This document shows, piece after piece, positions 14,301 through 64,000 of a stretch of DNA of 64,000 nt (within the stretch, counting starts at the first letter, position 1; the number at the start of each line of letters is the position of its first letter). The stretch spans positions 16,058,001 through 16,122,000 of the forward strand of contig NC_047062.1 in assembly GCF_902459465.1 (NCBI RefSeq). Direction: 5' to 3'. The DNA comes from Asterias rubens (Eukaryota). The notes under the pieces were generated by a model, which was not told where the DNA came from, did not search any database, and was given only the letters and a program-made list of their open reading frames with translations. Both the position numbers and the translations under genes were made by a program.

Positions 14301-17300
14301 ATTTTTTCTCAGAAGCTCTTCTGTCTCTTTCAATACGAAAAGGAACTTAAACTTGAATAGGGGCCAACTAAAAATGTCAACACACCACCAGGATCCGCGG
14401 CTTAACGGCTCATCGCTGGTCTCTTGTGGATTACATTAATATTGTCCCCGTTTTCAGTTTTGCTTGCCTAAAAAATACCAGTCTTGATTTAGAGGGCATC
14501 CTGGAAAGATGCCAGAGTTTCTTTGAGCTTGAAAGATTTGCTGACTTCTTGGTGTAAAAAGGCACAATTTTGTATGAAAAGAATACACTGTCAAAACGTG
14601 TTACACTATGTTTCTTATTTACTCTGTGATCAAAAACAAGGTAGACAAAGCAAGGTTTATTGGAGTCGTTGAGTTTGAATCGCGTGCCAAATGTGATATC
14701 GACTGAACCAGTGCCACTGCCTAAGGATCTAATTAGTCAAATCCACTGAGTTTCTGCTGACTGTTCTCCCCAGATAGCGATCTTGTTATTGTGTTCACAC
14801 ACTGGGTTTATTCAACAAGGGCTTAGGGGACTCTTGGTGGCGTGCTTTAAATCCCCGCGGGAAACGAGAAGTTGGGAATGTGGAGTGAGATTTTAATCGG
14901 GGAAAATTTGCTGTAACAGGAATAACATTTGAAGTGTGGGTTGACGTCTTTATTATACGATCCAAATTTTCTGGGTTTTGTATTTTTCTTTTAATTGTAG
15001 TGTTTTTTAATTTTCTTATGTTTAAGTCAATCTTAATTTGAAATAATGGCCCGTTGAAACTTCAATGTACGTGTGACATGGCTACCATAGGTTTAATTTT
15101 TAAAGCTCGTTTTTGTTTGTTTGTTGGGTTTGTGTGGTGTTTGTTTGTTTGGGTGTTAGGATTTTGGGTTCGTTGGTTTGTTTGTTTCTTTGCATTGGTG
15201 GGGGTTCTTGCCCATTTTAACTGATGCAATTAAACCATCGAGGAGCGCGCGTTCTTTATTCTTCCAGTAAAGGTTTAGCGATTTATCCATGGTTAAACCG
15301 AGTAGGTTTGAATGCGTTGCTCTTTCCGCAGAACCAGAAATCAGTGAACCGTTACAGGCGGCAGCTTCATCAATTTTGCAGCAGTCCTCTTTTCAGTCTT
15401 TTGTGGGATATTTTGCCAATTAATGTAAAAAGAAGTCTCAGACACATTGGCGCTCAGATTCACTCAACATTGCGAAGTGGGATTTGCTTTCAACTTTGAT
15501 CTGGAACCTAGATATCAAATCGACGCCAATGTAGCTCGTCGTAATTTTGACTTTCTTGATGTGACCATGGAGGAAGGAATGATTCCCGGATGTTATTGCG
15601 AAACACATTTTATTCATGAATTTATTGCTCCGGTTACCTCGATCAACTCATAATTGCGTCTATGAGCTGTATCTATTCTAATGTCTCTCTTTTTAATGTA
15701 CAGGTTCCACTCTGGCGGGAAACAGCCCCTTGGCACGGTACCACATTAGAGGGCCTTGCTTTAGACGAGTCACCACAAACCAATGCCTCGCCCCGATGTC
15801 CGACGCTACCACTCTCCACGACGATTGCTGTGCCACTGTCGGTCAGGCTTGGGGCACTAGCTGTCACATGTGTCCCCAACAACTCGGTGAGTGTCATTGT
15901 TGTCCCTAAAGATAAATACACTGTCCCAACAAAATAGATACAAGCACCGGTAGGTGTCACTGTGGTGAAACTATGGTCACTGTGGTGATAGTGCCAACAT
16001 TGTCATTGTGTCAAATTTGTGAGCGTCACTGATTGTATATTATTCCCCAATTTATTTCAAATTTACCCGGTCAGTTTTCCTTGTCAGTTTTCCTTTGTTT
16101 TACAGCTACGTATTGATTTCACATTCAACTGCACAATTCGCGCCAATAACATTAACAGGAATAGGAAGTGAGAAGAAATGCTCAGTTTTAGATTTGAGAG
16201 GAAAACCACAAATCATAGGGGGAAAACCCACGCAATCAGGTGGGGACTGAAAACCCATATCAACACGCAAGGCTCGGGTCTGAGGTAAGATTCGAACCGG
16301 GGTCTACAGAGGTGAAAGGCAGGGAATGAAACCCCAGAACCAACATAATTCCTGTGTGTTAGTATTACTCAGGTGTTTGGCAGTCGCTATCGCTTGTTTC
16401 CCGGCAAGGTGCTGATTACCAATGCTTTCCAAAAGGACTAGTAATATGGACATCACCTCAAATTGGTCCCCCGTGCCTGACAATTAAAACCGCATCCCCA
16501 CCTCGGACATAACTTCCCAACAAGTGGGTGGGATGCCGATTTTGGACTGAAAGGCAGGAGCTGTCAAAATGCCCAAACTAATCAGGCTGGTGATTTCAAA
16601 TGTCGTGTCGGCCATTGGACACTTATCCAAAATGTGATTGTCAACAATTCTAAGACAGAATCTTTGAGATAACACCTCTGTTACTGTCCACAGAACTCGT
16701 TAACCTCACAGGCCTATTGACATCACGTTCCTCATTCCCAAAGGGTTCACTAATGAAAATGAATTCTAAAACCCTTACGGTAATCTTGGTCCAGTCGAAA
16801 AGGTCATGACGTAAATAAATCCTCCAACTTTGTGTGATACGATGAAGAAAGAAAATCCAGTCAACATTTTACTTTTTAGAACTCCTTGAAAAATGAAACC
16901 TAGAATCATAAACGTGAAAGTACACTGTGTATTCCTCTGAGACGAAGAAGAGAGCTGGAATTGTATACGGGAAACGATTTATGTCTAGACCCCAGACGAC
17001 TAATTGCACCTTGGCACACGCAGCATTATGGGGAATAGTTTGCAGCTGTAAGGAACCGATAAGTGAAACCTGTCTACCAAGAGGAAACCAAAATCACGTA
17101 TAAGGAATCAGGAGAACTTTGAGTTGTAAAAACGAGGGATCTTGCGAGCACAAAGAGTCAGTGACAGTATATACCCTTTTCGAAACAACGGCATCGGCTT
17201 TGGATTCTGCGCACGTATACGCAAAGCACGCGCAATTTTCAAAACAACCGCGTGGCCAAGCTAGCCTTAGCCGAATCTGGAGCTGAAGCCGTTGTTTCGA

Positions 17301-20300
17301 AAAGGGCAATAGTTTTTGACGAAGTACTGGAGGAGTGTGATACTTGTATCACATGGACTTCTGGATCAAAACAAACCGATTTGCCAATTCCCTCCAGAAC
17401 TACGTAAGAAATGAAAATTTACACGGAGTCTGCTGCCACCTAGCGTTACAATGTCTCCCATTATTTGCTCGTAATGATATGTTTTTTTTTTGTTTTTTTT
17501 CAGGACGTGAGAATCATTGCAATAAAGGTTTTAAGAAGGTTACAGTATCGGAAACAATGTGCAATCTGCTGCCACCTAGCGTTACAAAGTCTCCCATTAT
17601 TTGCTTATAATGATATTGTTTTTTGTTTGTTTACAGGACGTGAAAATCATTGCAATAGCGGTTTTAAGAAGGTTCCAGGTTCGGAAACAAGGTGCATGGG
17701 TAAGTACCGGTATGGGTCCTTCTTAAAATTCTTAGGAGCAGTGTGTCTTAGGATAAAATCAGGTTTGTTTTCTTCTCAACTCTCAAGTTGTGGCTGTAGT
17801 CTGCTTCCGTGAACTGGTTGTATTAATTATTATTATAACACCATGGCCCAATAACATAAAGCCTGTAAGAATAAAACCTTTCGAAGCACAGAAAGATCTT
17901 GCTTTATAGAAACTTGTTACCAGCTGAAATTCCAAAAAGTTAACATTGTTGCATCTGGTGCCCACTCACTTTTTGCCTGGCAAAAACATTTACTAAGCAG
18001 TATTATCTGCATAACAGCTTCATAATAAAATTTGGGCCCAGATCCGACCTCCCCAAAGCAGCATTTAATTTCAAGCAAACCTATGAACTCAGGTATGAAC
18101 TTTTCGTTTAAACAATATACCAAATTTATTTATACAAATTAATGTTTATTTCCAGATGTAAATGAGTGTACGGCTTTCGACAACATTTGTATGAATGGCA
18201 ACTGCGTTAACACACGTGGTAGTTACCGCTGTCACTGCAGGCCCGGATATTCATTGGATCCGACCGGAACTATGTGCACGAGTAAGTAGACCCGGATTCA
18301 TCCGGATCACACAATGACTATAAGTGCAGGAGTCATGTATCCTTGGTTCCTGAATAACTGCATGTTGTGGCATACAAAACAATTTTACCAATTAGAGCCG
18401 AGGAAATTTAATTGTGGCTGCTCCGCTCGACAATAGCATAGGAAGGTATCAATTATGTCAAGCAAACTGTTTTGCCTTCAAATTTGTAGACTTCAAATAG
18501 TTGTTATTCAAAGTTTGATTGAGTCTGACCTGGAGACAATTGGGCTACGTTGCACTTCCTTGAACATATTTTGTAATTTTTTTTCGAGTTATGACCTTTT
18601 TGGTATATTTAACCACATTAAATTTTAAATGTTTAATCATGTCACGTCACGGAATCACACAATATTGACGACATTACACTTTTAAAGCACTGGACACGTT
18701 TGGTAATAATTGATAGCATAACAACTTACTTCGTAACGAGCAATGGAGAGCTATTGATAGTAAAAACATTGTGGGAAATGACTTCCTCTGAAGTAACATA
18801 GTTTTTAGAAAAAAGGTTAGTTTCTCACTCAAATAATAAAATACTTCTGCTGAAGCCTTTTATGATGCATCTGAAAGCACAAAAAGTAATGCAACTAAAA
18901 AGGTGTTTTTCTTTGATTATTCTCTTGCAACCTCAGTGACTCACTGATGAGCCCAAATTTCCACAGATGTTTTATTGTTTGAATAAAAAAAAATTATGTT
19001 GGGATACATCAAACGGGTCCAGTGCCTTTAAAGGGTTGCGTTCGGAACAACAAAGCATAAAATGTGAGGGTCTGTGAATTAATCACTTATCTGGAATTGT
19101 CTCTTTTTCATAACAAAGTGGAGGCCAAACGGAGATGTTTCAGACGGATATACGACGGTCGATGCCTGGCGTCGAGCGCCTCTGGTCGGCCGACTACACG
19201 AATGGAGTGCTGCTGCGGAATCGGCTTGGCATGGGGCTCAACGGCGTGTGAGCTTTGCCCGGCCAAAGGATCTGGTAAGAGTGATTAGAGCTTCGCTTAT
19301 TACATACTTCGGCAAAGCTTTTTTTCTTGTTTTTTCAAATGTTTTATTAAGCGGCAAAATCCTCGGGTATGACTCCAATTGAGTTGCCATTTCTTTGTGT
19401 ATTTGACAAGATTTTAACAAGGGACCCTGGGCGAGACTGTGACCTGTCATACGAGGTACACCTTGTAAAACTGTACACCCATGCTACAATTTACTCGTGT
19501 GAACAGGGCTTTAGCTACATAACACAAAGCATACCAATCCTTTAAACCGCCATATCAACTGAGATTCGAACATGGACAGCTGTTGTTTGATATTTTGGGC
19601 AGAGCTTGGTGAAATAAATTAAAGTATGTGATACTTAGCTACACAGTCTAATTCACATTGATTTCCAGCCGATGTGCTCTACATAGTTCCACACCTGAGT
19701 CAAATTACGGAGGGATATTTGTGGTGTGGCGCGTAACCTTTCATTTTGTGCACTGCAACACCTCATACATTGTCTGGATGACTAGGCATTTTGGAGCATC
19801 ATGAAAAAAAACACTTCCGTTCCAGCATTCCGAGACGGTTTATAAAGCATGTTCTACCCTTGCTCTGTGATTTTGATTATGTGTTTACGTGACCATCCTG
19901 TTTCGATGATCATGAAACGGGCCATCGCAAATAGTACGTGCCCATACGTATGCGACATCTTACGAATGCGCACAAAAAATAATTCGAGAAAAACCCTCAG
20001 GCATCGCACAAAAAGCACGGCATCGAATACGTATGCGTACATTTTGAGATATTATGCGATATCCGTCCCGAGCTCCGGCCCCGCTGGTTACGACACTAAG
20101 TGACTTTTGCTGTATAAAAAAATAAAGCAAAAACGGTTAGGGGGCCTATTGCCGTTGGCTGCGAGCAATGACAACGTTTGAGAATCATAAGACCATTTTG
20201 TGTCCCGGCTGTTCCGGCCGTAGCCACCGCCGAAGCCATCTGATAAGGCTCGTCGATCTCAAGATTGGGTCGGTCGTGCGGGTAAAACATTGACGCGCGA

Positions 20301-29300: not shown

Positions 29301-32300
29301 CAAAGGTTTCACACTTCAGGCTGAGAACTGTCTGGCATGTTTTGCTTACAATCTTTTATTCTTTCTTCAGATATCAATGAATGTAATGATGAAGATAGTT
29401 GTGTGAATGGCCAGTGTGTCAACCAACCAGGATCCTATCGCTGTGTATGCCCGACAGGAACACACATGTCTACAACGGAGGATAACACATGCATTGGTCA
29501 GTATTATCAGCAGGCATGATCTTCTTCCTACTATAGGCTGTTTGGGGTTTTTGCCTTTTTTTGGCCCTTGCACAAGTCACAAACATCATCATTAAAGGCA
29601 CTGAACACTATTGGTAATTACTCAAAATAATTGTTGGCTCCCTCTGAAGTAACTTCCTTTTTGAGAAATAGGTAACTTCTCACTCAAATTCAAAAAAAAG
29701 TAATGCAACAAGAGTGTTTTTTCTTTCCCTTGCAAATTCGATGACCAATTGAGCTAAACTTTTCACAGGTTTGTTATTTTATGCATAATGTTAAGATACA
29801 CCAAGTGAGAATTTACTGGTCTTTGACACTACCAAACAGTTCCAGTGTCTTTAATAAGGGTTAAAAGTCCAAAATACCTACATAATGTGCATCAGAATCT
29901 GCCAACTCTCCCCGATTCTGCGGAAAGTTCCCTGAAAATAAACCAATCCTTCCATGTTCTGATCAACAAATTTGAAAATCTTCCTGATTATGGAAACTTG
30001 TTCCCTTTATGTTGAATGTAATTCTAAATATTTTCCTGATTGCTGCACAAAATCTCCCAGAACTTGAATTTGATGCTCTTATTAACCACTCGGCCGTGAC
30101 ACCCTCTGAATCCACAGTGCAATTAAGCTTCCAATCTTTTTTCCCCGCAGATGTTGATGAATGTAGCGAGTCACCTGAAGTTTGTGGTGGAAATGGAATT
30201 ACTTGCGCCAATACCTTTGGTAGCTACACCTGTGAGTGCCCCAATGGTGCCATGTATGTTGAAGACATGCCCGGCTGCATCTACATGGACACCTTTACTG
30301 TTGGTAAATATACAAAATAACTTCTTCTACCACGCTCAGTGTTGTAGCCACAGTGGGCGGTACCAGGTTTGCGGCCTGCCTAGAACTAACAAATTTGGCA
30401 CAGCACTCGCAGCAAAATACACTGTGCGGCCCAGCACAGATTTCCCCCAGATGGTACTTCAGCAATTATGGCCCCATTTCTAAACATGAATAATTTTGTT
30501 GAACTGCTCGCCCTTGGTGGACTAGATTGGATTTAGAGCCCACCACTAAAATTGGTCTAGCTTACATTACTGTCCATGATCAATATAATTTTCAAATGTT
30601 TGCTATTTTTTTTTTTGCACTGTCAGCAGTAAAAACACATTTTAGGGAAAAATTACTGAGTTACGAATCTCTTATTGAGATTAAGCATACCAGTTGTTTC
30701 TTTGTTAATGTGAGGGATTATTTTCTCATTTTATTTGTATTGATTCATTATTATTATTCTTCAATTTTTCTTTCCAAGAAACAACGCCAGCTTCTCCCGC
30801 GACGCCCGATGAAGAAGAGCAAGGTCCAGAGAGGAAGGACTGCTACGCTTCTGTTGACGACCCCAATTTCTGCAGCAATACTTTATCCTCTAATGCTACC
30901 AGGCAGGAATGCTGCTGCAGCGTGGGTGCTGGCTGGGGAGATGACTGCCAGCTCTGGATTTGCCCGCCGGAAGACTCATGTAAGTCACTCAAAGTGAGCT
31001 AGTGCCAATAATTTCATAAAAGTTTTGATATTGATTTGATATTAGGTAGATTGATAAGCCCACTGTTTCACAATCGAATACCATATTGTACTAATAATGA
31101 TAACCGTATTAATCCTAATGACTAGTTTTTAGTTAGTGCATGAAACAATAATGTATTAGTGCACTTTACATTAGTGCCCTTGGTCATTGCCAATTGGGCA
31201 AAATATTTGACACTACAAAATGGCGACTGTGTTAGTTTACAAAGCAAAAGGAAAACCACAAACTTTGAGGCACACTTGATTGGATCATTATATTCTACTT
31301 TTACAGCATCTTTCCAGCCACATTCATTTCATAAGAAACGCTTCTTATCCAAGGCAACGAGTCCCTTTAACTAGTAGAAAACAAGTTTGGTTAAAAAGTT
31401 GAAATAAGGATATTATGTAACTAACACAATAAATGTTCCAGTAATAGTTGAACTTTGTGATTAAATCTTCGGAGTTTGTATTTTTATATGTATTCTTCAG
31501 TTGAATACAACCAGGTTTGTCCAATGGGGCGAGGGCATGCAGAGATTGAGGGCATAGAGGGATTGCATCCTGTTTTAGCAGCACAGAGAGACACAGGTGA
31601 GCAATGGACCCTTCCCATGAAATATGCTAATTACATTCACCCATGCATAAAGACCCTGTTGGTTGGCAAACTCCATAGAGTTGTGCACTAAATAGACGCG
31701 CAATCGCGTCTGCGTCACGCACCCATTACCAGTGATGTTCCCTACGTGCAATTTACATATTTCATTGGAAGGGTCTATTCTATTCAATTAAATTTATTTA
31801 TCATATTGGTGGTAAGTCATGGCCTAGCGGTTAAGAGCACCAGATTCAAGCTCTGGTGTTTGATCAGCAGAGTATGGGTTCGAGTCCCGGTCGTGACACT
31901 TGTGTCCTTAAGCAAGACACATAACCATGATTGCTTCCTAAAGTTGTGGAGGTAGTGCTTTCTGCTCTACCAGCCAGGCTTCTGATGGATGATACCCGAG
32001 CCTACATCCGTAAGGGACTGTGAAGGGGGTAACCCTGTTTCAGCCCAGGAGTACTGAGGTGGCAACGGCCCCTGAAAAAAACTTGCATATAAATCAAATC
32101 AAATCATGTGAAAACTCATTCGGGGTTTAATTTGAATGTCGTTTCTCTATCCTTGCAGGTATCAATGAGTGCAAAGTATTTCCACAGATCTGTGGTGAGT
32201 TATCCTGCTCTGATCTAAATATGATGTACACATGTGAATGTCCAGAAGGCCAACAATACAACATGGACAACAAGGAATGTGAAGGTATGTTCATTGTCTT

Positions 32301-35300
32301 TGCTCCCCGTGCCATTCTTTAGTAAAGAGTGCTCCCCTTTAATACGTTTTTTTATGAAGTTGTATCTTTCACACCTTGGCTTGTTGTTTTTTATTTTGGG
32401 TATGTGGTTGAACCATAGAGCTATATATATCGACTAGAGCACTAACACCCTGTTGTACGCCAATCGTACGGCTATTTGCATGATAGTGTGTTTGTTCTTT
32501 ACTATGGTGTCATCAAAACAGAAAATGCAGCAAATGTGAAAGCACAATCTCCTGATGAGCGAACAAACTGTGAGCGTCATGTGCGTCCTGTTTAAAAGGC
32601 GCGTATACTTTTTTTTTAGTACGTCAATCAAGTTGAACTTACGGTTTTCGTAGCGCGGACGTTCGCGAATGGGCAGTCGCGTACGTAAGCGCACATGCCA
32701 AATGTGAAAAAAAAAGTGGCAATGTGTTTCACTCAACACATCAAACATGTCTGCGTCCAGGGTGGATTCAAAACGCAGAGCAAGTTAGCGCTCTAGTCAA
32801 TATATATAGCTCTATGGGTTGAACACACAAAACATGAACACTGTCTGCATCTGTTTTAAACAGACCTGTGTAAAAACTTTAAGAGAAAATGTATCGCTAA
32901 CCCTCTCTACTGTGGCAGACCAGGGCCTAAGTTCATAGAGCTGCTTAACTGCCGATGTTGTGCTTACTGTGCAATTTCCATTTCATAGCAAAGCTTCGAA
33001 TGCTAACTTTATCAAATTGAATGACGGAATAATGCAAATTAATGTTGAACGGGCAATATGGCTTGTAAGCTAGTTTTTTAGCTTACCCGTTAAAATACGC
33101 TTACACCTTGGCAAATAAAGCACACAAATTTGCTTAACGTTAAGCAGCTCTAATAAATTGGGCTCAGGTGTTAAAAGCAGACGGATGGGAGTGTGTACTA
33201 AAGCCATCATTTGAATTCCCTTCTCTGAAGGCATTAATGAGTGTGAGACAAGCCCAGGTGTCTGTGGTAGATACCCCTGCGTTGATCTAGAGGTCTCTCA
33301 TACCTGCCAATGTCCTGATGGTCTCCGGTACAACCTCGACGACAGAAAATGTGAAGGTGTGTGTCTAGCTCAAAACATTGTTTCAGGTGTTGAACAAAGA
33401 CAAATTGACTAGAGCAGGGATTTGAACCAATGACTTCTGGATTAACATGGAGGCACTCTACCTACTGAGCTACACAAACATCTAGCCATTTGTTGGCGGT
33501 CTCCCTATTTTGTTACGGTCTTTGTCTGGGGGTGCTAGTCAGAAGCCGTACAACCGTAAACCGCTGTGTAGTCAGGGATCACAAGTTATCCCGCTCCAGT
33601 CATGTTGTCTTTGTTCAACTTAAATCATTTAAAATTTACCCAGTCATTTTTCCCTTGTGATTTATTGTTTGATATTTAAAGAGGTAGTATGATGAGTGCA
33701 GTCGGCTTAAGTTGTCGATTGTAAAAAAAAAAGAAGTTAAATTGACTTCTTGGGTTTTCTTGTCTGACCTCCTCAAGGCATCAATGAATGTGAAGAGGAC
33801 CCTGATATCTGCCAAGGAAAACAATGTGTTGATCTTGAGGTGATGTATACCTGTGAGTGCCCCGAGGGTACCCGCTACAATAGAGAGAACAGTCGCTGCG
33901 AGGGTAAGTCATTACAACTTCTACAAAAAAGAAAAATCTGTATTTAGTTTGCCTTGATAGATAGTTCCCATTTGACTAAAACTGAACCATTTTCTTTTTA
34001 ATGCACAACTATGCGTTTTGTGTAAATAGAGAACTATGTATTTACCTGGTGAGTCTTCAGCCACCTACCGCCCCAAGAGTCTCCCATTTGGTGGTGATCA
34101 CTCTACGTGGATTAACTCCTTTCAAATCTTTACTGGGGTGGAGGATTGGTGAGCCTTTCCCCTTCCCTTGTTGACTTCCTTCATTTGCGCCTCAAGCAGG
34201 TCAAAGTTTAGAGTGGTCATGTTTACGTTATAAAGAAAAGCTTGATGTGTTTTCCATCAGGTATCAATGAGTGCGACGTCAACCCAGGAATCTGTGGGAG
34301 TTTGCCATGTGAGGATCTGGAGACTCTGTATACCTGCCGTTGCCCTAATGGGTACCAGTACGATAGAGAAAGCAGACGCTGTGAAGGTAAACAATCTTAA
34401 TTGCTGAAATAAACTGATTTTTGTCACACAATTTTTGTTTTATAACCATTTTTTATGGTACTTTAACCCATTTTAATTGCTAATTTTAGCTGCCATTGTC
34501 ACTGATTTGAATATGAACAAAAAAGTTGAAATATTGCGTCGTCCCCCCCCCCATGATGTAAACCTCTGATTGTAAGATGTGTTAACATTTTTTGTCTCCC
34601 CAGAACTCAATACCTGTACCCGCTATCCGACCATCTGTGGTGAGGGGACTTGCGTGATTGATCGCTTTGGAGGATTCCAATGTACCTGCCCACAGGGACA
34701 GGAGTTCAGGCGCAACAGTCGCACCTGTCATGGTAATGTTTAACAGTTAAATTGGGTGTCCCGTTATACATAAATAGACTTGCAGGCATATAAATGAAAC
34801 TCAAACATTTTTGTAAATTCCTAATTCATGGATGAAGAATTGAGAATGTTGATATTAATTTTGTTTTTCACCCTTTTACCAATGTGTGTTCCACTGTATA
34901 CTCAGTACTTTCCTGAATTCTGTGAAAAAAAATCACAGGCATATTACTCGGGTGGGATTCGAACCCACGACCTTTGCAATTCTAGAGCAGAGCTTCCAAC
35001 TAGACTGCCTGGTAGCTAGAGGCAATCGCAACTGTTAGCAACTTGTTACTGCAATGATTTAAAGGCACTATTGGCAATTACTAAAAATAATTGTTAGCAT
35101 AAAAACTTACTTGGTAACAAGTAATGGAGAGCTGTTGATAGTATCAAACAGTGTGAGAAACGGCTCCCTCTGAAGTAATGAAGTTTTTTTTTTTGTCTTC
35201 TTAATTCCTCAGATAAGAACTGGTGTCGAAACAGTCATTGCGGTAATGGAACCTGTGTGGAGACCTTAGACAGCTTCCAGTGTGTGTGTCCAGAAGGATT

Positions 35301-38300
35301 TGAATATAGAGCAGAATACTACACCTGTCTAGGTTAGTCCACTAAAAATGTATATACTAAACTAAGCGCCTTGAGTACCTTAAGTTGTTGGTAGATATGT
35401 GCGCTATATAAGACTTTGATTTTATTTAATAAGCTACATGGATATCAAGCGACGAATTTGATTAAAACAAGAAATAAAAAATTTGAGTATAACAAATGAA
35501 CAAAAAAACCACATAATCTTTGCAGCATTTTGTAAGTCAAAGCAAATACATGTCTATCATAGAAGCTGTTTATTGTTGACGATTTGCTGTTGTTTTTGTT
35601 GTTGTTTACCTTGAAGCTCTTGACGAGTGTAGAAGATATCCAGATATTTGCGGCAATGGGACCTGCGTGGCCAGAGATCGCTCCTACCGATGTCAGTGTC
35701 AGGAAGGATATGAATTCAAGAATCAGTACCGTGCTTGCGTAGGTAAATATAAGCCTTTAAGCATTCTCTAAACCTGAGCTAAGGAATAGATACCCATCCA
35801 AACCAAGAACTCCAACAGTGTCTCAGCCTTCAAACTGGCTCTCAAGACCCACGTTTTTTCCCCTAGTCTTAGCTGGTCGACAGCGTCTTTGTATTGTCTT
35901 TTTTGCTTCAGCGCTTTGTATTCTTTGGCAATTGCTGCTTTATAAAGATAGTTGTTACTACTATACCTCATACATATTCATGACAGAGAGTCGAGTTCTC
36001 ATTGGTCCATTCATATCAGTTTTTTGCTAACTACCAAGTGCGCACGTGAGTATTCACGCAAGTGGTTAATGCGCATGACAAGTAATAGTTCCCCGGGAGC
36101 TGTTCTACTTGTCTTGCGCACTACCATTGCGCGACTTTATCCCCAGGCGCTATTGATCGTGGCACCGTTTTGTATACACGCACCGTTTTGTATACACAAA
36201 CTTATCATGTGCATTTTGTTTCACAGAAATCATTTTCTCTTGCTCAAAACTCGTGTTCCGGTAACTGAATATGTATGAAATATAGTAAAACAAATATAAC
36301 ATGGTTTATTTCGGGTGACTAGTCGATATTAGCTCCCCGAGGTATTGGAAGTTGACAAACTAGTTCCCGAGGGTTCCCGAGGCGAAGCCTCGGGAACTAG
36401 TTTGTCAACTTCCAATACCTCGCCTTGGGAACTAGTTTGTCAACTTCCAATACCTCGGGGAGCTAATATCGACTAGTCACCCGAAATAAACCATGTTATA
36501 TTTGTATACTATTCTGCTTGATGTTGGAAACACTGTGCACAATGTTCACTGCTCCGAAACTCATGACAGAGTATAAAGTTCTGCTCTACCAGCCAGTCTC
36601 CTGGTGGATGATACCCATGCATACCTCCCTAATGGACTGTGAAGTGGGGTAACAGTCCAAGGAGTAGGTGGCAACATGTCCCTGGATTGCAGTTGATTCG
36701 GGTCAATAGCCCAAATCAGTCAAGTGTAGCAGTTGATGTGGCCATCCAGACTTATGATGCGGGCGATATTTCATTAGAAAATATGTTAAATTTTTTTTTT
36801 TTTTTTTAAACTAAACATGAAACAGATTTGTCCTGATAGAACAATCTCTCATTTTGATTCTTCCAATTCATAGCACCAGTATATTCAAATGTTTTTTGTT
36901 TCTTTTTGCATGAAACAGATTTGTCCTGATAGAACAATCTCTCATTTTGATTCTTCCAATTCATAGCACCAGTATATTCAAATGTTTTTTGTTTCTTTTT
37001 GCCAATATGTGAAAAAAATCCAAAAAGGTAACAGAATATGTGACACTTTTTTATGTTTCAACTTAATAAATACTCATTATTACTGCTTTCTCCAGAAGAC
37101 GATCAGAGCATACCGATCGAAACGTCGAGTTAAAACCATGCAAAGTTTCAAACCCTACTTATTACAGTTAAGGATCAGGGTCATCAATAGTCTTTGTTTT
37201 TTTGTGAATCATGCAGTTTCCAATGAGTGTGTAGCATATCCCGATATATGCGGAAATGCAACCTGTGTGAACGGAGACCGCTCTTATGAATGCCAATGCC
37301 CAACTGGTTATAACTTCGATACTGAACATGGTTATTGTATTTGTAAGTACAAACACATCTTAAACTGCACAGTTCTTCTTTTTTTCCTATTTATCCTGGT
37401 GTTGGCAAATTTGTTTGATAAGGGAATCAGTGTGTGGTGAAGAGGTTTTCAACTAGTGGTTTAAACCCGCCGAGGCCAAGGTAAATTATCAAGAAACAGG
37501 CCTCGGCGGGTTTAAACCACTAGTTGAAAACCAATTCAACACACTTTGATTCCCATTCATAAATACCTTTTCGGTCAAAGAATATCAACACTTTTTGGTC
37601 AAAAAGTAAAATAAATGCAAAAATTATAACTGTTCAATGATTTCTTTTCAAAACACACCCCTCCAGCTATGAAATGGTAAGGCCCTCGGGTAAACAACTT
37701 ATAAAGAGATTGCTGTGCGCACCGCGCGTATCGTGTGATGTGGCACAACTGTTCCAGCCGTTGCTCTCGACCAATAGAAATGAAGAAACTGTCTTATAAG
37801 CACAGGTGCAAGCTCGCGTGTCACGCCCATGTTTCAACACTTTTTACTGGTGTTATATCATCCGTTCAAACAATCCCTCGTGATGCCCTCTCGACAAATC
37901 AGAATGGATAAACTGTCTTAGGTATTTATGAATGTGTATCAATGACTATAAAAAGTTACTTGGTAAAGAATACTGGAGAGCTGTTGATGATATAAAACAA
38001 TGTACTGATATGACACCTTGTAAAGTTATGTAGTTATAGAGGTTTTGAAAACATCACGCGCCATTCTGAACTGTCGGCTCGGTTTACGCTTTGTAGCAAT
38101 CGCACAAACGTTTGCCCCGAGTGGTACAACACCCCTGAAGACTGATTGTTATTATGGAGATTTTCAAGACATCACTTGCTGTATATGATTTTTTTAGCTC
38201 TAGGCGGCAGCAGACCAACCAGGTACTTTTGTAAATCCAATATTCTTGGTAATTTGCGCATGGTCAGAACTATGTATGTAGTGGAAATTACCTGGTAGTC

Positions 38301-41300
38301 TGCCGCCAGCATCCTGGAAGTATGCATCCAGCTAGCAATCCAAAGTCTGCCATTGATAACTTGTTATAACTCAGTGAATGACATGTGACATGCCAAGCTG
38401 GTTTCTGCAGGTGATAGGATGTTCTCTGTAATTTGCCCTCAACTTTGGAATCAACTTCTTAAGCTTCTTGGGGAAGCCAACAATGTTGGTACATGTAGAT
38501 TCAAGGTTAGCCTTCAGACAAACCTATTCAAATCTTTAAAAAAAAAATTAGCAATGAGGGGTTCTTTGAGTTAGCTTTTATCGTAATTGTTAAAGGAACA
38601 CGTTGCCTTGGATCGGACGAGTTGGTCTTTGAAAAGCGTTTGTAACCGTTTGTTATAAAATGCATGTGGTAAGAAAGATGTTTAAAAAGTAGAATACAAT
38701 GATCCACACACATTTGCCTCGAAATTGCACGGTTTTCCGTTTACTTTGCGAACTAACACGGTCGGCCATTTATGGGAGTCCATAAATGGCCGACCGTGTT
38801 TGACGAAGAGGTAAAAGGAACACCACGCAATTTCGAATGATACTTGTGTGGATAATTATATTCTACTTTTTAAACACCTTTCTAACCATATGCATTTCAT
38901 AACAAACGGTTACAAACACTTTTCAAAGACCAACTCGACTGATCCAAGGCAACGTGTTCCTTTAACAGTTTTTACTTATTTGATTCGTTAGTGTACAGGT
39001 ACTGCCTCTAATACCTGTATTTTAATGTTTTGTAAGTTTAAATTGTCATGATTGTTACTATTATTTGATTGATTTATTGCAGTAACGAATGACTGCTTAG
39101 CGTACAATGACATCTGCGGTAATGGATCCTGTGTCATGACATCGGATGGCTATCATTGTGTTTGCTACCAGAATGGTTATGAATATGATTACACCTCTGG
39201 AGGATGCATAAGTAAATATAAATCAATTTTTGTCTTTTAATAAATTCAATTCAATCAAGTCAACATCTATTTCCATATTGGTGAAAAAAGGAGAATAATA
39301 AACAAATTAAGTGCAATTATTTAAAAGGATTTGGTACTTAAAGGTTTATGGTAAAGATAATGATGATAGAAAGCTTCCCTTTAAATATATTACCGGTACT
39401 TGCTGAGGTGCTTTGGTTTCTGAGAAATGAGTAAAACAAAATTCCTCAGTGAGACAAAAATTATTTTTGCATGTACAGCGAATTTATGCGACTCTCCTGA
39501 AAACATTGCTCTGTGATTTCACTTTTTTTCATAAAAACTTGTCAACTAATGAAGCTGAAACTTCTACAGGTACAATGTAAATTATATTACATACATCTTC
39601 ATTCACAGTCAGTAGGGATTCATGTCATGTCCCAAAATTTGATCTACAAAAAGTTGACATTATACAATTGTTGCACGCTGTGACGGGGTCCATGGCGTTT
39701 TGGACACACGAGGGGGAAATGGCACCCGAGGGGGAAATGGCACCCAAGGCGAAGCCGAGGGTGCCATTTGCCACCGAGGGTGTACGAAACCCATGGACCC
39801 CAGTCACAGCGTGCAACAATTGTTTTGTTATACCTTTGTTTAATTGACCAACGCTGGGAACGATCAAGGTGATGTACACCGGTGTACATCACTTTTCATG
39901 TTACCTGGCCCGTCGAGCCATGTAACATGCGTTTTTGTTGCGCGCCACATGATTGGTTCTCGACCAATCAAACTTCGCTGTTTGTTATTGAGGCATAACA
40001 ATATTGCTTGTTATTTCTTGACCAGTGACTGACAAGTGTCTAGCGTACCCAGATATATGTAGCAATGGGACGTGCTTCAGTGACGCTGCTGGATATGAGT
40101 GTATGTGCCCTGACGGCTATGAATGGGACGGAACTCTAGGATTCTGTGCGGGTAGGAAACAGTTTGATGAACATCTTTGTCAGTAGTCAGTTTTAATATC
40201 AGTAATTCTCGCCTGGCTTGGTCTGCACGTTCTCTTCATAGAGAGACCAGCTTTTGCTGGACTTTCTTTGCCTTATGCCGCGGGCCTGGCCGTGGTTTCT
40301 GATTTCTTTCCCATTTTTGTTGTTTTTAAATGGTATTATTATTATTTGTAAGTATAATTTTGAGTTAAACAAAGAAAAAATGACCGTGGGATTTGAACCG
40401 GTGACCTCCAGATTAATGTACTGGCCCCTCTACCAACTGAGCTAAAGCCATAGGGCTAGATCGCTGAGTTGGTAGAGTGCTGGCACAATAATCCAGAGTT
40501 CATTGGTTCAAATCTTGCTGTCTTCAATATTGAAACCCCAAATTATTTACAATTTACCCAGTCAGTTTCCCTTGTGGGTTATTACATTGTGTTTTCAAAT
40601 AAAAAAAAGTTTATTTTAGTATGTAAAAAAGTCAACAGTATTTGTCAAGTAAACAAAAATTAATAGAGTCTTATAACACACCTCTTGCTCGTTCTGTATT
40701 CTGATTGGCTGAAACACGGTCACGTGGGATGAACTAATATACGCTAGTGATCGCGCGCGCATGTTTTGCTGAAATAGTACCAGAGCGGGCACAAGTCTTT
40801 GCAAATAGTGCCCGCGGTAACAGCGCCCTCTGTTGACTTGAACCGTGAACAAACTACAAAATTCCTTTTTCTGTTCTTATTTGACATTTTAAAACCGAGC
40901 TGTGTTATAAAACACATATTGACTAGCATAATTCGGTAACTAGTGTACGTCTATTCCCCCCTCGGGCCTGTGAGTGACCTGAAGAGGGGCCATTTCCCTC
41001 GGCCTTCGGCCTCGGGAAATAGGTCGCTCTTCTGGTCACTCAAGGTCCCTCGTGGGAATAGACGTAAACTAGTTACCTCATTGCCAGTCAATATGTGTAT
41101 ACTATTAAAAAGTTTGCTCTTATCTACATGTGCGCTGCTTCCTGAAGTACCTAATAATATATTTTCTGTCTAAGTGGGATGACGTATCCTACTTTTCAAT
41201 ATTTCTGTTGATCAAAGTCTTTTGTATATTTTGCCCTTAGTACTTGACTTATGCAGAATCCATGGCAGTACATGCAATAACGGAACATGCGTGATAGTCG

Positions 41301-44300
41301 GCGACACCATTAACTGTCTCTGTCCCAATGGATACCAGTTTGATCTTACTCTGAGAGTCTGTGTAGGTAAGTCTACTGTAAATATGGACGTAGTAACCGC
41401 TGATGAGGGGGTGCCGGTTTGCCCGTTTGCTGGCTGGAGGGAGTAAAGCCCGGTTCATACTTCCAGCGAATGCGAATGCGCTACGAATGTTGACGTCACA
41501 AATTTGCAATGAATAATTCGCAGGGGTTGAGTTGTGGGTAACTCTCCTGCGAACATCGCAGCGAAAATAGAGTTGTGCATGACGTCAAATTCGCATCAAA
41601 TTCGCCTCACATTCGCATTCGCAGGAAGTATGAACCGGGCTTTCTGTATGCTTCATTTTTGAAAAGACAAGGGCACCAAGGCATTCTCTCCTGGGTAAAG
41701 GGCACCCTATGTAAAGATTATTGCTACATAGCAGTATAATTTTAAGTCTTGCTCTGTGGCAATTATAAAATTGTCTTAAAAGACCGTTTCGTTTTGGTCT
41801 TAATTTCCACTGTTGCTGAGCCATTATTATTCAAAAGTATTTCATTCATGTACAGGTAAATGAACTTTACAACTGATTTAATTTGTCTAACATAAACCTT
41901 CACTTGTAAAGATAATCCTTTTTTCTTCTTCTCCAGAAATCACCACCTGTACCCGCTATCCGACCATCTGTGGTGAGGGGACGTGTGTGATGGATCGCTT
42001 TGGAGGATTCCAATGTACCTGCCCACAGGGACAGGAATTCATTCGGTCAACACGCACCTGTCAGGGTAAACGAGGCTTCCATTGAATTTTTGAAAATGAC
42101 TAGATTACAGCTTGCCAATGTAGCATTATGGAAAATCTAATGTTGCATTTTAGGATTGCATCTTAGGGTGTCATGGCCGAGTGGCTTAGAGTGTGGGTTC
42201 GAAACACGGTCATGACACTTGTGTCCTTGAGCAAGATGCTTTACTATAGTTTCTTCTCTTCACTCAGAGGTATAAATAGGTACCTGTAAGGGTAGAGGTT
42301 GATAGTGTATAAATAGGTACCTGCGAGGGTCGAGGTTGATATTGTGTATGGAAAAGCCTTGATATTGTGTATGGAAAAGCCGGATGTGACACTTGTGTCC
42401 TTGAGCAAGATGCTTTACTATAATTGCTTCTCTTCACCCAGAGGTATAAATAGGTACCTGCGAGGGTCGAGGTTGATATTGTGTATGGAAAAGCCTTGAT
42501 ATTGTGTATGGAAAAGCCGGATGTGACACTTGTGTCCTTGAGCAAGATGCTTTACTATAATTGCTTCTCTTCACTCAGTGGTGTAAATGGGTACCTGCGA
42601 GGGTCGAGGTTGATATTGTGTATGGAAAAGCCTTGATATTGTGTATGGAAAAGCCGGATGTGACACTTGTGTCCTTGAGCAAGATGCTTTACTATAATTG
42701 CTTCTCTTCACTCAGTGGTGTAAATGGGTACCTGCGAGGGTCGAGGTTGATATTGTGTATGGAAAAGCCTTGATATTGTGTATGGAAAAGCCGGATGTGA
42801 CACTTGTGTCCTTGAGCAAGATGCTTTACTATAGTTTCTTCTCTTCACTCAGTGGTGTAAATGGGTACCTGCGAGGGTCGAGGTTGATATTGTGTATGGA
42901 AAAGCCTTGATATTGTGTATGGAAAAGCCGGATGTGACACTTGTGTCCTTGAGCAAGATGCTTTACTATAATTGCTTCTCTTCACTCAGTGGTGTAAATG
43001 GGTACCTGCGAGGGTCGAGGTTGATATTGTGTATGGAAAAGCCTTGATATTGTGTATGGAAAAGCCGGATGTGACACTTGTGTCCTTGAGCAAGATGCTT
43101 TACTATAATTGCTTCTCTTCACTCAGTGGTGTAAATGGGTACCTGCGAGGGTCGAGGTTGATATTGTGTATGGAAAAGCCTTGATATTGTGTATGGAAAA
43201 GCCTTGATATTGTGTATGGAAAAGCCTTGATATTGTGTATGGAAAAGCCTTGATATTGTGTATGGAAAAGCCGGATGTGACACTTGTGTCCTTGAGCAAG
43301 ATGCTTTACTATAATTGCTTCTCTTCACCCAGAGGTATAAATAGGTACCTGCAAGGGTAGAGGTTGATAGTGTATAAATAGGTACCTGCAAGGGTAGAGG
43401 TTGATAGTGTATAAATAGGTACCTGCAAGGGTAGAGGTTGATAGTGTATAAATAGGTACCTGCAAGGGTAGAGGTTGATAGTGTATATATAGGTACCTGC
43501 TAGGGTAGAGGTTGATAGTGTATAAATAGGTACCTGCAAGGGTAGAGGTTGATAGTGTATAAATAGGTACCTGCAAGGGTAGAGGTTGATAGTGTATATA
43601 TAGGTACCTGCAAGGGTAGAGGTTGATAGTGTATAAATAGGTACCTGTAAGGGTAGAGGTTGATAGTGTATATATAGGTACCTGCTAGGGTAGAGGTTGA
43701 TAGTGTATAAATAGGTACCTGCAAGGGTAGAGGTTGATAGTGTATAAATAGGTACCTGCAAGGGTAGAGGTTGATAGTGTATAAATAGGTACCTGCAAGG
43801 GTAGAGGTTGATAGTGTATATATAGGTACCTGCAAGGGTAGAGGTTGATAGTGTATAAATAGGTACCTGCAAGGGTAGAGGTTGATAGTGTGTTTGAAAG
43901 AGCCACTGGACCCCCACAGCAGCACCGGGCTGTATACTCCCTAGGGAGCTGAGAAAGATTAAAGGAGTGTTATTGACTCAATGACTGGTACTAATGTAAG
44001 GCGCATTGAGACGGTTATTGTGAAATGCGCTATACAAGAACTAGTTATTATTATTTTATTATTATGTACTGACCATAATTTTCATGAGAAAAGTACTCTA
44101 TAAGAAGTCACTGTTATTATTTTCTACATCCGTGATATATGAACCAACCGTGCCGTTATACAGGGCAAGATTTGTGTCGGAACAGTCATTGTGGTAATGG
44201 TACATGCGAAGAGACTGCCGATAGCTTCCAGTGTGTGTGTCCAGAAGGTTTTGAATATAGACCAGAGTACTACACCTGTCTCGGTGAGTATGACAATTAA

Positions 44301-60589: not shown

Positions 60590-61122
60590 TCAGCAACTCT
60601 TTCTTAAAATCTTAATATCTTTTTCTGTGTATGTTTTGATGTGGTTTTTATCGGTTGTGCCTTCCATTGTACAAAATCCATTTTCAAGAAGCAGCTTATG
60701 CACATTGGAAGGGTTGGGGCGTGGTTATCACCCCCCCCCCCCCCCCCCTCCCCAAAGCTGCATGGTGAGCCAATGTACCCAGACTACGAACTAACATGCT
60801 GCATTTTAAGCTATGGAGCATTGGAAACATCTTCATTCATTTCTGTAATGGGAATTGTTGATTATTGGTGGGGTCTTTGTTTTGTTTATTTGGTCAGTTT
60901 AAAAATGTCTATATTTTGAGGTTTACAAGCAATCATTTGGCCTACTTGACTGTATTTGTGTGTTTCGTAGAAACTCAAGCAGTCACATGAAGTCACATGA
61001 ACTTGTCTCTCCATGCTTACTTGAGATCCCCATAAACAAATACTGGATTTAGTTTGAGGTGAGTATAATAATTCAGCTCAAGCTCAATCGACTTTTAAAC
61101 TTGCAACAGCTTAAAAATTCCA

Positions 61123-61128
61123 AATAAA
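61123..61128 (+). terminator. Candidate polyadenylation signal (AATAAA) of the LTBP gene
   Basis: First AATAAA I found downstream of the stop; others at 62473 and 62584; no transcript evidence. Confidence 0.3.
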
Positions 61129-61630
61129 TATCAACAAAATGAATATATTTTAATCTGTTGTATAATCTTTTAAACATCTAGAAGTTTAACCTTGAAAATT
61201 GTATATTATTATTACATGACACATCTGCTTTTGTTTGATTTGCCGTTTGTGCAAAAATGTTGAAGCCAATGTTCCTCTTAAAGGTTCGGTCTTAGATTGG
61301 TTTTTGTCAATGAAATGCTGATTTATAGACAAAATTATCAAGAAACATGAAGTAAAAGTCAGTCACCTGTGAAAGTTTCAGCTGAAAACAGTGTTTGTAC
61401 AGCAAACAAAACATGGTATTTTCATGAAGAACGTTGAATCCATCCACGTTTAGTGAGGGGGTGGTGATTACCAACAACATCTCTGGGCGCAGCATTCACA
61501 AACGGACACCAAGGAAATTAGACTTCTCAGTCGACCCTCAGAAATCTGAGAACCGATTCATGCATGAATCGTTTCTCAGACTGAAATGTTTTTGGATCAA
61601 AAGTTATCCAAACCATATTACTATGAAAGT

Positions 61631-62032
61631 GGAAGTGTCGTGGCCGAGTGGTTAAGAGCACCGAATTCAAACTCGGGCGTTTCTGATCAGCAGAGTGTGG
61701 GTTCGAATCCCCAGCCGTGACACTTGTGTCCTTAAGCAAGACACTTAACCATTGCTTCGTATGGGATGTAAAGCCGTAGGTCCCATGTGTTGTGTAGCGC
61801 ATGTAAATGAACCCAGTGCACTTATCGAAAAAAAAGGGGTTCGCCCTGTTTTTTTTTGCTGTGGCTGCTGTATGCGTCGAAGCACATTGTAAACCCTTAA
61901 AGTGTGCTAAATAATTGGGTCTCAGAATTCATCACTGCAATAACCTACATCTCTCTGAAAGTTTGTATATACTCAGCGCCTTGAGTACCTTGTTATATAA
62001 GACTTTGATATTATTATTATTATTATTATTAT
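61631..62032 (+). mobile_element. Near full-length tRNA-derived SINE with CORE-like block and (TAT)n tail
   Basis: A-box tggccgagtgg, B-box ggttcgaatccc, gtgacacttgtgtccttaagcaagacacttaacc, tail tattattat... Confidence 0.85.
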
Positions 62033-63896: not shown

Positions 63897-64000
63897 TCCC
63901 AGAAAGTCTCCCATTGTTCAAACAGTCCAAAGGTGTGGTAGTTAACCTTACACCATCAGATGTTAGAATTTCAGGCCTGAAATTATGGCGTCTTTGCCCC

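What the first reader, a model, noticed from the sequence alone, without database searches (positions are those of the whole stretch)
30779..31596. Invertebrate TB domain with the full latent-TGF-beta-binding signature
Seen: ...[27 protein letters not shown], with four residues between Cys6 and Cys7. The other three 8-Cys domains in this gene have two (CHMCP, CELCP, CDPCP), which serves as an internal control. Established: the two-residue insertion at this position (CEIFPCP in LTBP1) is what lets the 2-6 disulfide exchange with the LAP cysteine; it is absent from fibrillins and LTBP2. The N-glycan sequon before CCC and nearby acidic residues (DD, plus DEEE upstream) also fit. Inference: this animal covalently tethers a TGF-beta-type ligand in its matrix; the QLWI insertion is a new natural variant.
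Basis: partly seen in the sequence, partly recalled or inferred. Interest (0 to 1): 0.72.

Follow-up and report, generated by a model that had tools for sequence, protein, structure and literature searches.

The report
Sea-star LTBP growth-factor-tethering domain
This sea-star gene is the counterpart of the vertebrate matrix protein (LTBP) that chains the growth factor TGF-beta to the tissue scaffold, and its chaining module is well preserved. Such proteins were already known from invertebrate relatives of vertebrates, so it is a sound but fairly ordinary find.

Summary
Two expressed, correctly spliced exons (30779-30979 and 31501-31596, + strand) encode an 8-Cys TB domain with four residues (QLWI) between Cys6 and Cys7. 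The gene's two other TB domains and its hybrid domain have two.

The domain aligns without gaps to the TGF-beta-binding TB domain of human LTBP1 (62-65 bits, against 33 bits and a two-residue gap for fibrillin). It scores 82 bits against a profile of non-echinoderm LTBP middle TB domains, against 41-47 for the other TB classes. Sea-urchin, crinoid and acorn-worm proteins show the same 2/4/2 spacing, so this is the sea star's LTBP orthologue.

"Full signature" overstates it:
- Kept: loop length, a hydrophobic loop, Cys2 and Cys6, the critical Asp, the glycan sequon and most of the hydrophobic core.
- Lost or changed: the loop proline (now Ile), the loop Glu (now Gln) and one further acidic residue.

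A non-proline hydrophobic residue at loop position 4 is an echinoderm-wide pattern (DLMI, DLIV, EFWL). Covalent binding of pro-TGF-beta is likely (about 0.65) but untested, and I could not examine the ligand gene.

Published work already reports the insertion in all LTBP-like proteins of invertebrate deuterostomes, so this is a new member of a known kind. It does contradict a 2023 review stating that echinoderms lack LTBP. The scan holds other notes on this same gene (s1-180012, s1-180017), none on other DNA.

The parts
30779..30979 (+). TB2 exon 1: acidic/Pro-rich linker, then Cys1 to Cys7 of the LTBP-type TB domain
   Evidence: Translation. Pfam TB at 5.6e-12. Gap-free alignment to human LTBP1 TB, 1KSQ and 9R3S_C. 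Splice sites and RNA contigs.
31501..31596 (+). TB2 exon 2: ...[12 protein letters not shown]..., carrying Cys8 (31518-31520) and the linker to the next EGF
   Evidence: Joined to exon 1 in RNA contigs. Spliced translation. Aligns to LTBP1 AEFTEMCPKGKG.
30871..30873 (+). Cys2 codon, equivalent to LTBP1 C1014. It is one of the two cysteines that switch to the prodomain.
   Evidence: Alignment. Role taken from the cryo-EM preprint.
30946..30948 (+). Cys6 codon, equivalent to LTBP1 C1039
   Evidence: Alignment. Role taken.
30949..30960 (+). Four-residue Cys6-Cys7 loop QLWI, equivalent to LTBP1 E1040-I-F-P1043
   Evidence: Compared across 199 middle TB domains.
30892..30900 (+). N-A-T glycosylation sequon, three residues before CCC
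   Evidence: An N-x-[ST] sequon sits at the same place in all orthologues listed.
15757..15876 (+). Hybrid domain (CC, not CCC) with two-residue spacing (CHMCP)
   Evidence: Best solved match is fibrillin-1 hyb1, 5MS9. Collinear with sea-urchin residues 175-261.
19136..19261 (+). TB1 (Cys1 to Cys7-Pro) with two-residue spacing (CELCP)
58556..58684 (+). TB3 (Cys1 to Cys7-Pro) with two-residue spacing (CDPCP). It scores best against the LTBP C-terminal TB profile.
   Evidence: 44.3 bits against LTBP TB3, 31-36 bits against the other classes.
29369..30303 (+). The two calcium-binding EGF exons just upstream (29369-29495 and 30150-30303), the last of five between TB1 and TB2
   Evidence: RNA contigs, translation, ORF scan.
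32159..57827 (+). Run of about 24 single-exon EGF-like modules between TB2 and TB3
   Evidence: Cys-rich ORF scan. The first two are confirmed in RNA. Sea-urchin and crinoid orthologues also have about 800-900 residues between TB2 and TB3.

Best explanation
The two exons encode the middle TB domain (called TB2, 8-Cys3 or 'third TB' in different papers) of the sea star's single LTBP orthologue. This is a secreted matrix protein built as N-terminal 4-Cys/EGF, hybrid, cbEGF, TB1, five cbEGF, TB2, about 24 EGF, TB3, linker, EGF.

By homology with LTBP-1 and LTBP-3, the proposed mechanism is as follows. The four-residue hydrophobic loop (QLWI) and the preceding VDDPNF loop form a hydrophobic, acidic surface around the Cys2-Cys6 disulfide. 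Inside the secretory pathway the prodomain dimer of the animal's TGF-beta docks there. The Cys2-Cys6 bond is then exchanged for two interchain disulfides, so the latent growth factor is deposited covalently in the matrix.

Shown here: the sequence, its splicing and expression, its orthology, and which determinants are conserved. Inferred: the docking, the disulfide exchange, and the existence of a suitable cysteine in the ligand.
For: - Gap-free alignment to human LTBP1 TB: 62.3 bits to 1KSQ and 65.1 to 9R3S chain C. Fibrillin TB gives 33.5 bits with a two-residue gap exactly at the loop.
- Profile test: 81.7 bits against non-echinoderm LTBP middle TB domains, against 42.7 (TB1), 41.4 (TB3) and 46.7 (fibrillin-like).
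- All 140-odd best hits in 1.8 billion representatives are LTBP middle TB domains. Full-length hits have TB spacings of 2/4/2.
- The gene is collinear with sea-urchin, crinoid and acorn-worm proteins.
- Conserved determinants: Cys2 and Cys6; loop length 4; hydrophobic L-W-I; D1037 equivalent; E1003 equivalent (Asp); D1010 equivalent; V/F/A at L1008, L1013 and V1033 (LTBP-3 has F/F/A); the N-x-T sequon.
- The AlphaFold2 model of exon 1 has pLDDT 77, and its best solved match is 1KSQ.
- The gene is expressed and spliced as modelled.
- Literature: the insertion is conserved in all LTBP-like proteins (PMC3306419). LTBP and true TGF-beta co-occur in deuterostomes, including acorn worm (PMC3906135). 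Sea urchins have one true TGF-beta with RGD (PMC8931421).
Against: - Three residues with mutational support differ: P1043 is Ile, E1040 is Gln and D1015 is Ser. V1046 is Pro, and the flipping loop contains a Pro (VDDPNF against LNDASL).
- LTBP-4 shows that a four-residue loop is not sufficient for binding.
- Profiles of LTBP-1/3-type and LTBP-4-type domains do not separate the sea-star domain (88.1 against 83.8 bits).
- The TB-domain tree is unresolved.
- The mutational data come from an unreviewed preprint on human proteins.
- No echinoderm LTBP-TGF-beta complex has been shown experimentally.
- I could not retrieve or inspect the sea star's TGF-beta gene.
Confidence: 0.7

Rival explanations
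1. The gene is the LTBP orthologue, but its TB2 no longer (or never did) bonds covalently to the TGF-beta prodomain. The four-residue loop would be an inherited structural feature, as in vertebrate LTBP-4, and the protein would serve as a structural, microfibril-associated matrix component.
For: The loop proline, the loop glutamate and one acidic residue are lost, and V1046 is Pro. In the 2026 preprint LTBP-4 (RIQQ) has the same spacing and does not bind. LTBP-1/3-type and LTBP-4-type profiles do not discriminate. The rod architecture is unusual, with 24 EGF modules after TB2.
Against: Loop positions 2-4 stay strongly hydrophobic in every echinoderm class sampled, and D1037 is invariant there. 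LTBP-4 has polar QQ and lacks that Asp. The hydrophobic core is V/F/A rather than LTBP-4's T/A/E.
Confidence: 0.22
2. The domain tethers a different TGF-beta-family prodomain (for example an activin- or myostatin-like one), or another partner, rather than TGF-beta sensu stricto.
For: The interface residues that contact mature TGF-beta helix alpha-3 in the human complex (P1043, V1046) differ. The ligand was not examined.
Against: Across animals, the insertion-bearing TB domain and true TGF-beta are reported to appear together in deuterostomes (PMC3906135, PMC8931421). An unverified scan note reports a TGF-beta prodomain with RGD and the cysteine in this genome (s1-150746).
Confidence: 0.05
3. 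It is a fibrillin or an echinoderm-specific fibrillin-like protein that gained a two-residue insertion independently.
For: NCBI names the sea-urchin orthologue 'fibrillin-1'. A 2023 review treats such proteins as an echinoderm-specific fibrillin-like group (PMC10381214).
Against: The gene has three TB domains and one hybrid, not seven and two. TB2 scores 82 bits against the LTBP profile and 47 against the fibrillin-like one. It aligns without gaps to LTBP1 over the whole domain. An acorn-worm orthologue shows the same pattern. No fibrillin TB domain has the insertion (PMC3306419).
Confidence: 0.03

Closest known systems
Human LTBP-1 TGF-beta-binding TB domain (PDB 1KSQ; in complex in 9R3S chain C), and the equivalent LTBP-3 domain
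   Same: - Eight cysteines with identical spacing, including the four-residue Cys6-Cys7 loop.
- About 50-55% identity without gaps.
- N-x-T sequon before CCC and the GWGD motif with the critical Asp.
- An acidic residue before Cys1, a hydrophobic loop and a hydrophobic core.
- The same position as the middle of three TB domains.
   Different: - The loop is QLWI rather than EIFP or EIYP: no proline, Trp as the aromatic residue, Gln instead of Glu.
- Ser instead of Asp after Cys2.
- Pro instead of Val after Cys7-Pro.
- A Pro inside the loop that flips on binding.
- About 24 EGF modules follow it, instead of two.
LTBP-like proteins of other ambulacrarians: Diadema setosum XP_072166683.1, Strongylocentrotus purpuratus XP_011666114.1 (named fibrillin-1), Antedon mediterranea XP_071962422.1, Glandiceps LTBP3-like XP_077996106.1
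   Same: TB spacings of 2/4/2. Middle TB domains 47-55% identical to the sea star's. GWGDDC in the echinoderms (GWGDNC in the acorn worm). Loop positions 2-3 hydrophobic. The echinoderms also have the long EGF run after TB2 and a non-proline residue at loop position 4.
   Different: The loop sequences differ: DLMI, DLIV, EFWL and NLWP. Only the sea star has Gln at loop position 1. The acorn worm keeps the proline and the short TB2-TB3 spacer.
Vertebrate LTBP-4 and LTBP-2 middle TB domains
   Same: Same fold and position. LTBP-4 also has four residues between Cys6 and Cys7.
   Different: LTBP-4 has polar RIQQ, lacks the GWGD Asp and has T/A/E/G at the hydrophobic core. LTBP-2 lacks the insertion altogether. 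Neither binds through this domain in the 2026 preprint.
Fibrillin TB domains (for example 1APJ, 1UZJ)
   Same: The TB fold, the CCC triplet and the disulfide pattern.
   Different: Always two residues between Cys6 and Cys7. Half the alignment score. Seven TB domains per protein.

Membership tests
LTBP family | Three TB domains plus one hybrid domain, set among EGF/cbEGF arrays, with an N-terminal 4-Cys/EGF region | tested here: met
   Hybrid at 15.8 kb (best match fibrillin hyb1). TB domains at 19.2, 30.8 and 58.6 kb. N-terminal CCSGW exon at 9.7 kb and EGF at 11.1 kb. Collinear with sea-urchin orthologues.
LTBP family | Two-residue insertion between Cys6 and Cys7 in the middle TB domain only | tested here: met
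   CQLWICP against CELCP and CDPCP. The same 2/4/2 pattern occurs in orthologues.
LTBP family | The middle TB domain is closer in sequence to LTBP middle TB domains than to any other TB class | tested here: met
   81.7 bits against 41-47 bits. 62 bits to 1KSQ against 33 to fibrillin 1APJ. The maximum-likelihood tree was too short to resolve this.
LTBP family | C-terminal arrangement cbEGF-TB-EGF(non-calcium)-cbEGF (PMC3906135) | tested here: inconclusive
   cbEGF (57.7 kb), TB3 (58.6 kb), linker and a non-calcium EGF (60.4 kb) are present. No final cbEGF was found before the window ends.
LAP-binding-competent TB domain (LTBP-1/-3 type) | Cys2 and Cys6 present, and a loop of four residues | tested here: met
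LAP-binding-competent TB domain (LTBP-1/-3 type) | Hydrophobic loop ending in the aromatic-Pro pair of the 'EIFP/EIYP' motif | tested here: inconclusive
   L-W-I is hydrophobic and aromatic at position 3, but the proline is Ile. P1043G impairs human LTBP1. No data exist for Ile.
LAP-binding-competent TB domain (LTBP-1/-3 type) | Glu at loop position 1 (a charge reversal to Arg reduces binding) | tested here: not met
   Gln in the sea star. Asp or Glu in the sea urchins and the crinoid.
LAP-binding-competent TB domain (LTBP-1/-3 type) | Five acidic residues around the Cys2-Cys6 bond, with D39 (D1037) the most critical | tested here: inconclusive
   D39 is kept and three of the five positions are acidic (D, D, S, D, Q). 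Two extra Asp sit at neighbouring positions.
LAP-binding-competent TB domain (LTBP-1/-3 type) | Hydrophobic core 'LLVV/FFAV' | tested here: inconclusive
   V-F-A-P: three of four fit (LTBP-3 has F-F-A-V). The last is Pro.
LAP-binding-competent TB domain (LTBP-1/-3 type) | Forms a disulfide-linked complex with a pro-TGF-beta that carries the N-terminal prodomain cysteine | not testable with these tools
   No complex prediction or wet assay was available. I had no query with which to fetch the ligand gene. There is only an unverified scan note (s1-150746) and sea-urchin literature (PMC8931421).
Fibrillin | Seven TB and two hybrid domains; every TB domain has two residues between Cys6 and Cys7 | tested here: not met
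   Three TB domains plus one hybrid in 50 kb of gene. One TB domain has four residues. PMC3306419 reports no insertion in any fibrillin.

The most novel reading that the evidence does not exclude
Echinoderm LTBPs replaced the loop proline with a beta-branched or aliphatic residue, and ambulacrarians often use Trp as the aromatic. This interface may have co-evolved with the echinoderm TGF-beta, namely with the residue equivalent to W301 that stacks on P1043 in the human complex. That would give a natural, orthogonal LTBP/pro-TGF-beta pair. Together with the 24-EGF rod after TB2, it might change how the latent complex is held and pulled open.
Probability: 0.15. Interest if true: 0.5.

Novelty: new member of a known kind. 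Interest (0 to 1): 0.3.

Why it matters
- It confirms, with expression evidence, that sea stars carry the matrix-tethering half of the latent TGF-beta system. The tethering domain has been conserved since the common ancestor of echinoderms and vertebrates.
- It corrects current annotation. Orthologues are labelled 'uncharacterized' or 'fibrillin-1', and a 2023 echinoderm matrix review states that LTBP1 is absent from the phylum.
- It supplies natural loop variants (QLWI, DLMI, DLIV, EFWL, NLWP) that test the newly proposed rule that loop length plus a hydrophobic 'FP' end decides binding.
- It may matter for work on echinoderm regeneration and mutable connective tissue, where TGF-beta availability in the matrix is likely relevant.

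Tried and rejected
1. Retrieving the sea star's own annotated protein, or other asteroid orthologues. All three word-indexed searches failed to return one: the sea-urchin TB2 region, a 700-residue echinoderm-plus-window profile and a 220-residue profile. The lists filled with vertebrate LTBPs. Only a window-encoded cbEGF ORF (P0495) appeared. Conservation within sea stars therefore rests only on near-identical RNA contigs from two other coded organisms.
2. A maximum-likelihood tree of 58 TB domains had too few columns. The middle TB domains fall in one unresolved polytomy. I replaced it with profile scoring.
3. Telling 'binding' from 'non-binding' LTBP types by profile gave 88.1 against 83.8 bits, which does not discriminate.
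4. P0016 (3587 aa) from the representative search is a spurious low-complexity hit.
5. Robertson 2011, Robertson & Rifkin 2013 and Lapraz 2006 are not in the library. Their content is cited only through papers that quote them.
6. The ligand: no tool offered a legitimate TGF-beta query sequence, so the sea-star TGF-beta prodomain was not examined.
7. The whole TB2 domain could not be folded, because it spans two exons and has no single reference. Only exon 1 (Cys1 to Cys7) was modelled.
8. ARAGORN finds no tRNA in the tRNA-like intronic repeat.
9. My own recollection that LTBP-2 carries the insertion was wrong. The preprint gives 'DL--' for LTBP-2 and RIQQ for LTBP-4.
Full report
**What is there**

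The stretch 30779-31596 on the + strand holds two exons separated by a 521-base intron. Exon 1 (30779-30979, AG acceptor, GT donor) translates in phase as [66 protein letters not shown]. Exon 2 (31501-31596) continues [32 protein letters not shown].

Together they form one complete 8-Cys TB domain:
- Cys1 at 30841-43
- Cys2 at 30871-73
- the CCC triplet at 30910-18
- Cys6 at 30946-48
- Cys7 at 30961-63
- Cys8 at 31518-20

Four residues, QLWI, lie between Cys6 and Cys7. Pfam's TB model hits exon 1 at 5.6e-12.

Contigs from four RNA runs join exons 29369-29495, 30150-30303, 30779-30979, 31501-31596, 32159-32284 and 33226-33357 exactly. One 2111-nt contig has no mismatch at all. The gene model, the frame and the four-residue spacing are therefore real and expressed, not an assembly or reading artefact.

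The other three 8-Cys modules of the gene read CHMCP, CELCP and CDPCP. The first of them has CC rather than CCC and best matches the hybrid-1 domain of fibrillin-1 (5MS9), so it is a hybrid domain rather than a TB domain.

**Whose genome**

Earlier notes of this scan call the animal a sea star. The nearest full-length relatives I found are consistent with an echinoderm: Diadema and Strongylocentrotus (sea urchins), Antedon (a crinoid), and then an acorn worm.

**What the domain is**

Against all solved structures, exon 1 aligns without a single gap to the TGF-beta-binding TB domain of human LTBP1. It scores 62.3 bits to the NMR structure 1KSQ and 65.1 bits to chain C of 9R3S. The best fibrillin TB domain scores 33.5 bits and needs a two-residue gap exactly at the loop.

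A full HMMER pass over 1.84 billion cluster representatives returned 158 proteins. Essentially all listed hits carry a CCC...C-x4-C-P domain. Every full-length one has the pattern two, four, two residues in its three TB domains.

I built profiles from non-echinoderm LTBP TB1, middle TB, TB3 and fibrillin-like TB domains. The sea-star domain scores 81.7 bits on the middle-TB profile and 41-47 bits on the others. Its TB3 likewise prefers the LTBP TB3 profile.

The window's gene is collinear with the sea-urchin proteins from the N-terminal CCSGW exon (9.7 kb) through hybrid, cbEGF, TB1 and TB2 to the cbEGF before TB3. An AlphaFold2 model of exon 1 (mean pLDDT 77) finds 1KSQ as its best solved match. 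A maximum-likelihood tree of 58 TB domains was too short to resolve anything, so I do not lean on it.

Conclusion: this is the middle TB domain of the sea star's LTBP orthologue. I put confidence in the orthology at about 0.95.

**Does it carry the binding signature?**

- The insertion is described as absolutely critical and absent from every fibrillin TB domain (PMC3306419).
- A 2026 cryo-EM preprint (10.64898/2026.08.05.743009) shows Cys2 (C1014) and Cys6 (C1039) of LTBP-1 leaving their intradomain bond to bind Cys4 of each prodomain.
- The same preprint gives LTBP-2 as 'DL--' at the loop, that is, without the insertion.

That preprint also shows that spacing alone is not enough. LTBP-4 has four residues (RIQQ) and does not bind. 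It names these determinants:
- loop length, plus a hydrophobic end to EIFP/EIYP
- the loop Glu
- a hydrophobic core (L1008, L1013, V1033, V1046 in LTBP-1; F, F, A, V in LTBP-3)
- five acidic residues (E5, D12, D17, D39, E42), with D39 the most sensitive

The spacing of those five numbers fits E1003, D1010, D1015, D1037 and E1040 exactly. Mapping everything through the gap-free alignment gives:

| Human LTBP-1 | Sea star | Fit |
|---|---|---|
| E1003 | Asp | kept (acidic) |
| L1008 | Val | kept (hydrophobic) |
| D1010 | Asp | kept |
| L1013 | Phe | kept (hydrophobic) |
| D1015 | Ser | lost |
| V1033 | Ala | as in LTBP-3 |
| D1037 | Asp | kept |
| E1040 | Gln | lost |
| I1041 | Leu | kept (hydrophobic) |
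| F1042 | Trp | kept (aromatic) |
| P1043 | Ile | proline lost, still hydrophobic |
| V1046 | Pro | changed |

In short, the length, the two cysteines, the critical Asp, three of five acidic positions (plus two extra Asp next door), three of four core positions and a fully hydrophobic loop are kept. The proline, the loop glutamate and one Asp are not. The N-x-T sequon three residues before CCC is conserved from human to sea star.

'Full signature' is therefore too strong; 'most of the signature' is fair. Profiles of LTBP-1/3-type against LTBP-4-type domains do not separate the sea-star domain (88.1 against 83.8 bits). Only the individual residues speak to binding.

**Is QLWI a new variant?**

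The exact string is absent from the 199 distinct middle TB domains I retrieved. It is nonetheless one instance of a lineage pattern:
- Diadema: DLMI
- S. purpuratus: DLIV
- two unnamed exon-level fragments: DLMV and DLWV
- the crinoid: EFWL
- the acorn worm: NLWP
- vertebrates: mostly E-[IV]-[FYH]-[PA]

Echinoderms as a group have an aliphatic residue where chordates and the acorn worm have proline. Trp as the aromatic residue occurs in the sea star, the crinoid and the acorn worm. The sea-star-specific feature is Gln at loop position 1.

**Mechanism, and how sure**

By homology the domain should present a hydrophobic, acidic patch around an exposed Cys2-Cys6 disulfide. It should dock the prodomain dimer of the animal's TGF-beta in the secretory pathway, and swap that disulfide for two interchain bonds. 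The latent factor would then be laid down in the matrix.

I give this about 0.65-0.7. The main rival (about 0.22) is an LTBP-4-like, non-binding structural role. Minor rivals are another TGF-beta-family partner (0.05) and a fibrillin with a convergent insertion (0.03, effectively excluded).

The ligand side was not tested. I had no legitimate query with which to fetch the sea star's TGF-beta. Published work says sea urchins have a single true TGF-beta with an RGD (PMC8931421). An unverified first-stage note of this scan (s1-150746) reports a TGF-beta prodomain with RGD and the cysteine 5.5 Mb further along the same genome piece.

**Novelty**

LTBP-like proteins of invertebrate deuterostomes are already in the literature. 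[quoted passage not shown] 2011). A sea-star LTBP with the insertion is therefore expected: a new member of a known kind.

Two things give it some value. First, the echinoderm field has not absorbed this. A 2023 review says LTBP1 'is absent in echinoderms' and treats the extra fibrillin-like proteins as an echinoderm invention (PMC10381214). NCBI calls the orthologues 'uncharacterized protein' or 'fibrillin-1'. No paper in the library links LTBP to sea stars. Second, the proline-less loops are natural test cases for the rule proposed in the 2026 preprint.

The scan has other notes on this same gene (s1-180012 on the long EGF run after TB2, s1-180017 on the C-terminal linker), and none on other DNA.

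**Limits**

- The key primary paper (Robertson 2011) could not be read.
- The mutational rules come from an unreviewed preprint on human proteins.
- Only exon 1 could be folded.
- The sea star's own annotated protein and other asteroid orthologues were not retrieved.

Noticed in passing
window 34588-34736 vs 41920-42069, and 35223-35338 vs 44174-44289: A pair of neighbouring EGF exons is duplicated within the gene at 85-88% DNA identity (protein ...[13 protein letters not shown]... and ...[11 protein letters not shown]...). This suggests a fairly recent internal segmental duplication that lengthened the EGF rod after TB2.
   Followed up: partly
window 42213-43891: An intron holds two tandem-repeat arrays with offsets of about 137 and 74 bases and 90-98% identity between copies.
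   Followed up: no
window 29582-29863 and 31556-31978: Intronic stretches have enormous summed depth in RNA-run contigs (10^4 to 10^5, against about 10-90 for the exons), that is, dispersed repeats. The second contains a tRNA-like box sequence (GGTTCGAGTCCC...), but ARAGORN calls no tRNA, so it is probably a tRNA-derived SINE.
   Followed up: partly
window 32159-57827; P0040, P0060, P0086: The long EGF run between TB2 and TB3 (about 24 modules here) is also seen in the sea urchin (about 890 residues) and the crinoid (about 790 residues). It is absent from the acorn worm (about 170 residues), so it looks like an echinoderm-wide rearrangement of the LTBP rod. It is already noted by the scan as s1-180012.
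   Followed up: partly
window 60587-64000: The final calcium-binding EGF expected after the non-calcium EGF at 60398-60586 (the conserved LTBP C-terminus) was not found before the window ends. It may lie beyond 64000 or be split between exons.
   Followed up: partly
P0002, P0014 (hagfish LTBPs): Hagfish middle TB domains read CTIAICT. The loop has four residues but no aromatic, Ile at position 4, Thr instead of the Pro after Cys7, and GWG[ST]D instead of GWGD[ND]. This is another natural outlier worth testing for binding.
   Followed up: no
literature (PMC10381214, section 2.3.7): A 2023 review of echinoderm extracellular matrix states that LTBP1 is absent in echinoderms. The sea-star, sea-urchin and crinoid proteins found here contradict that.
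   Followed up: yes
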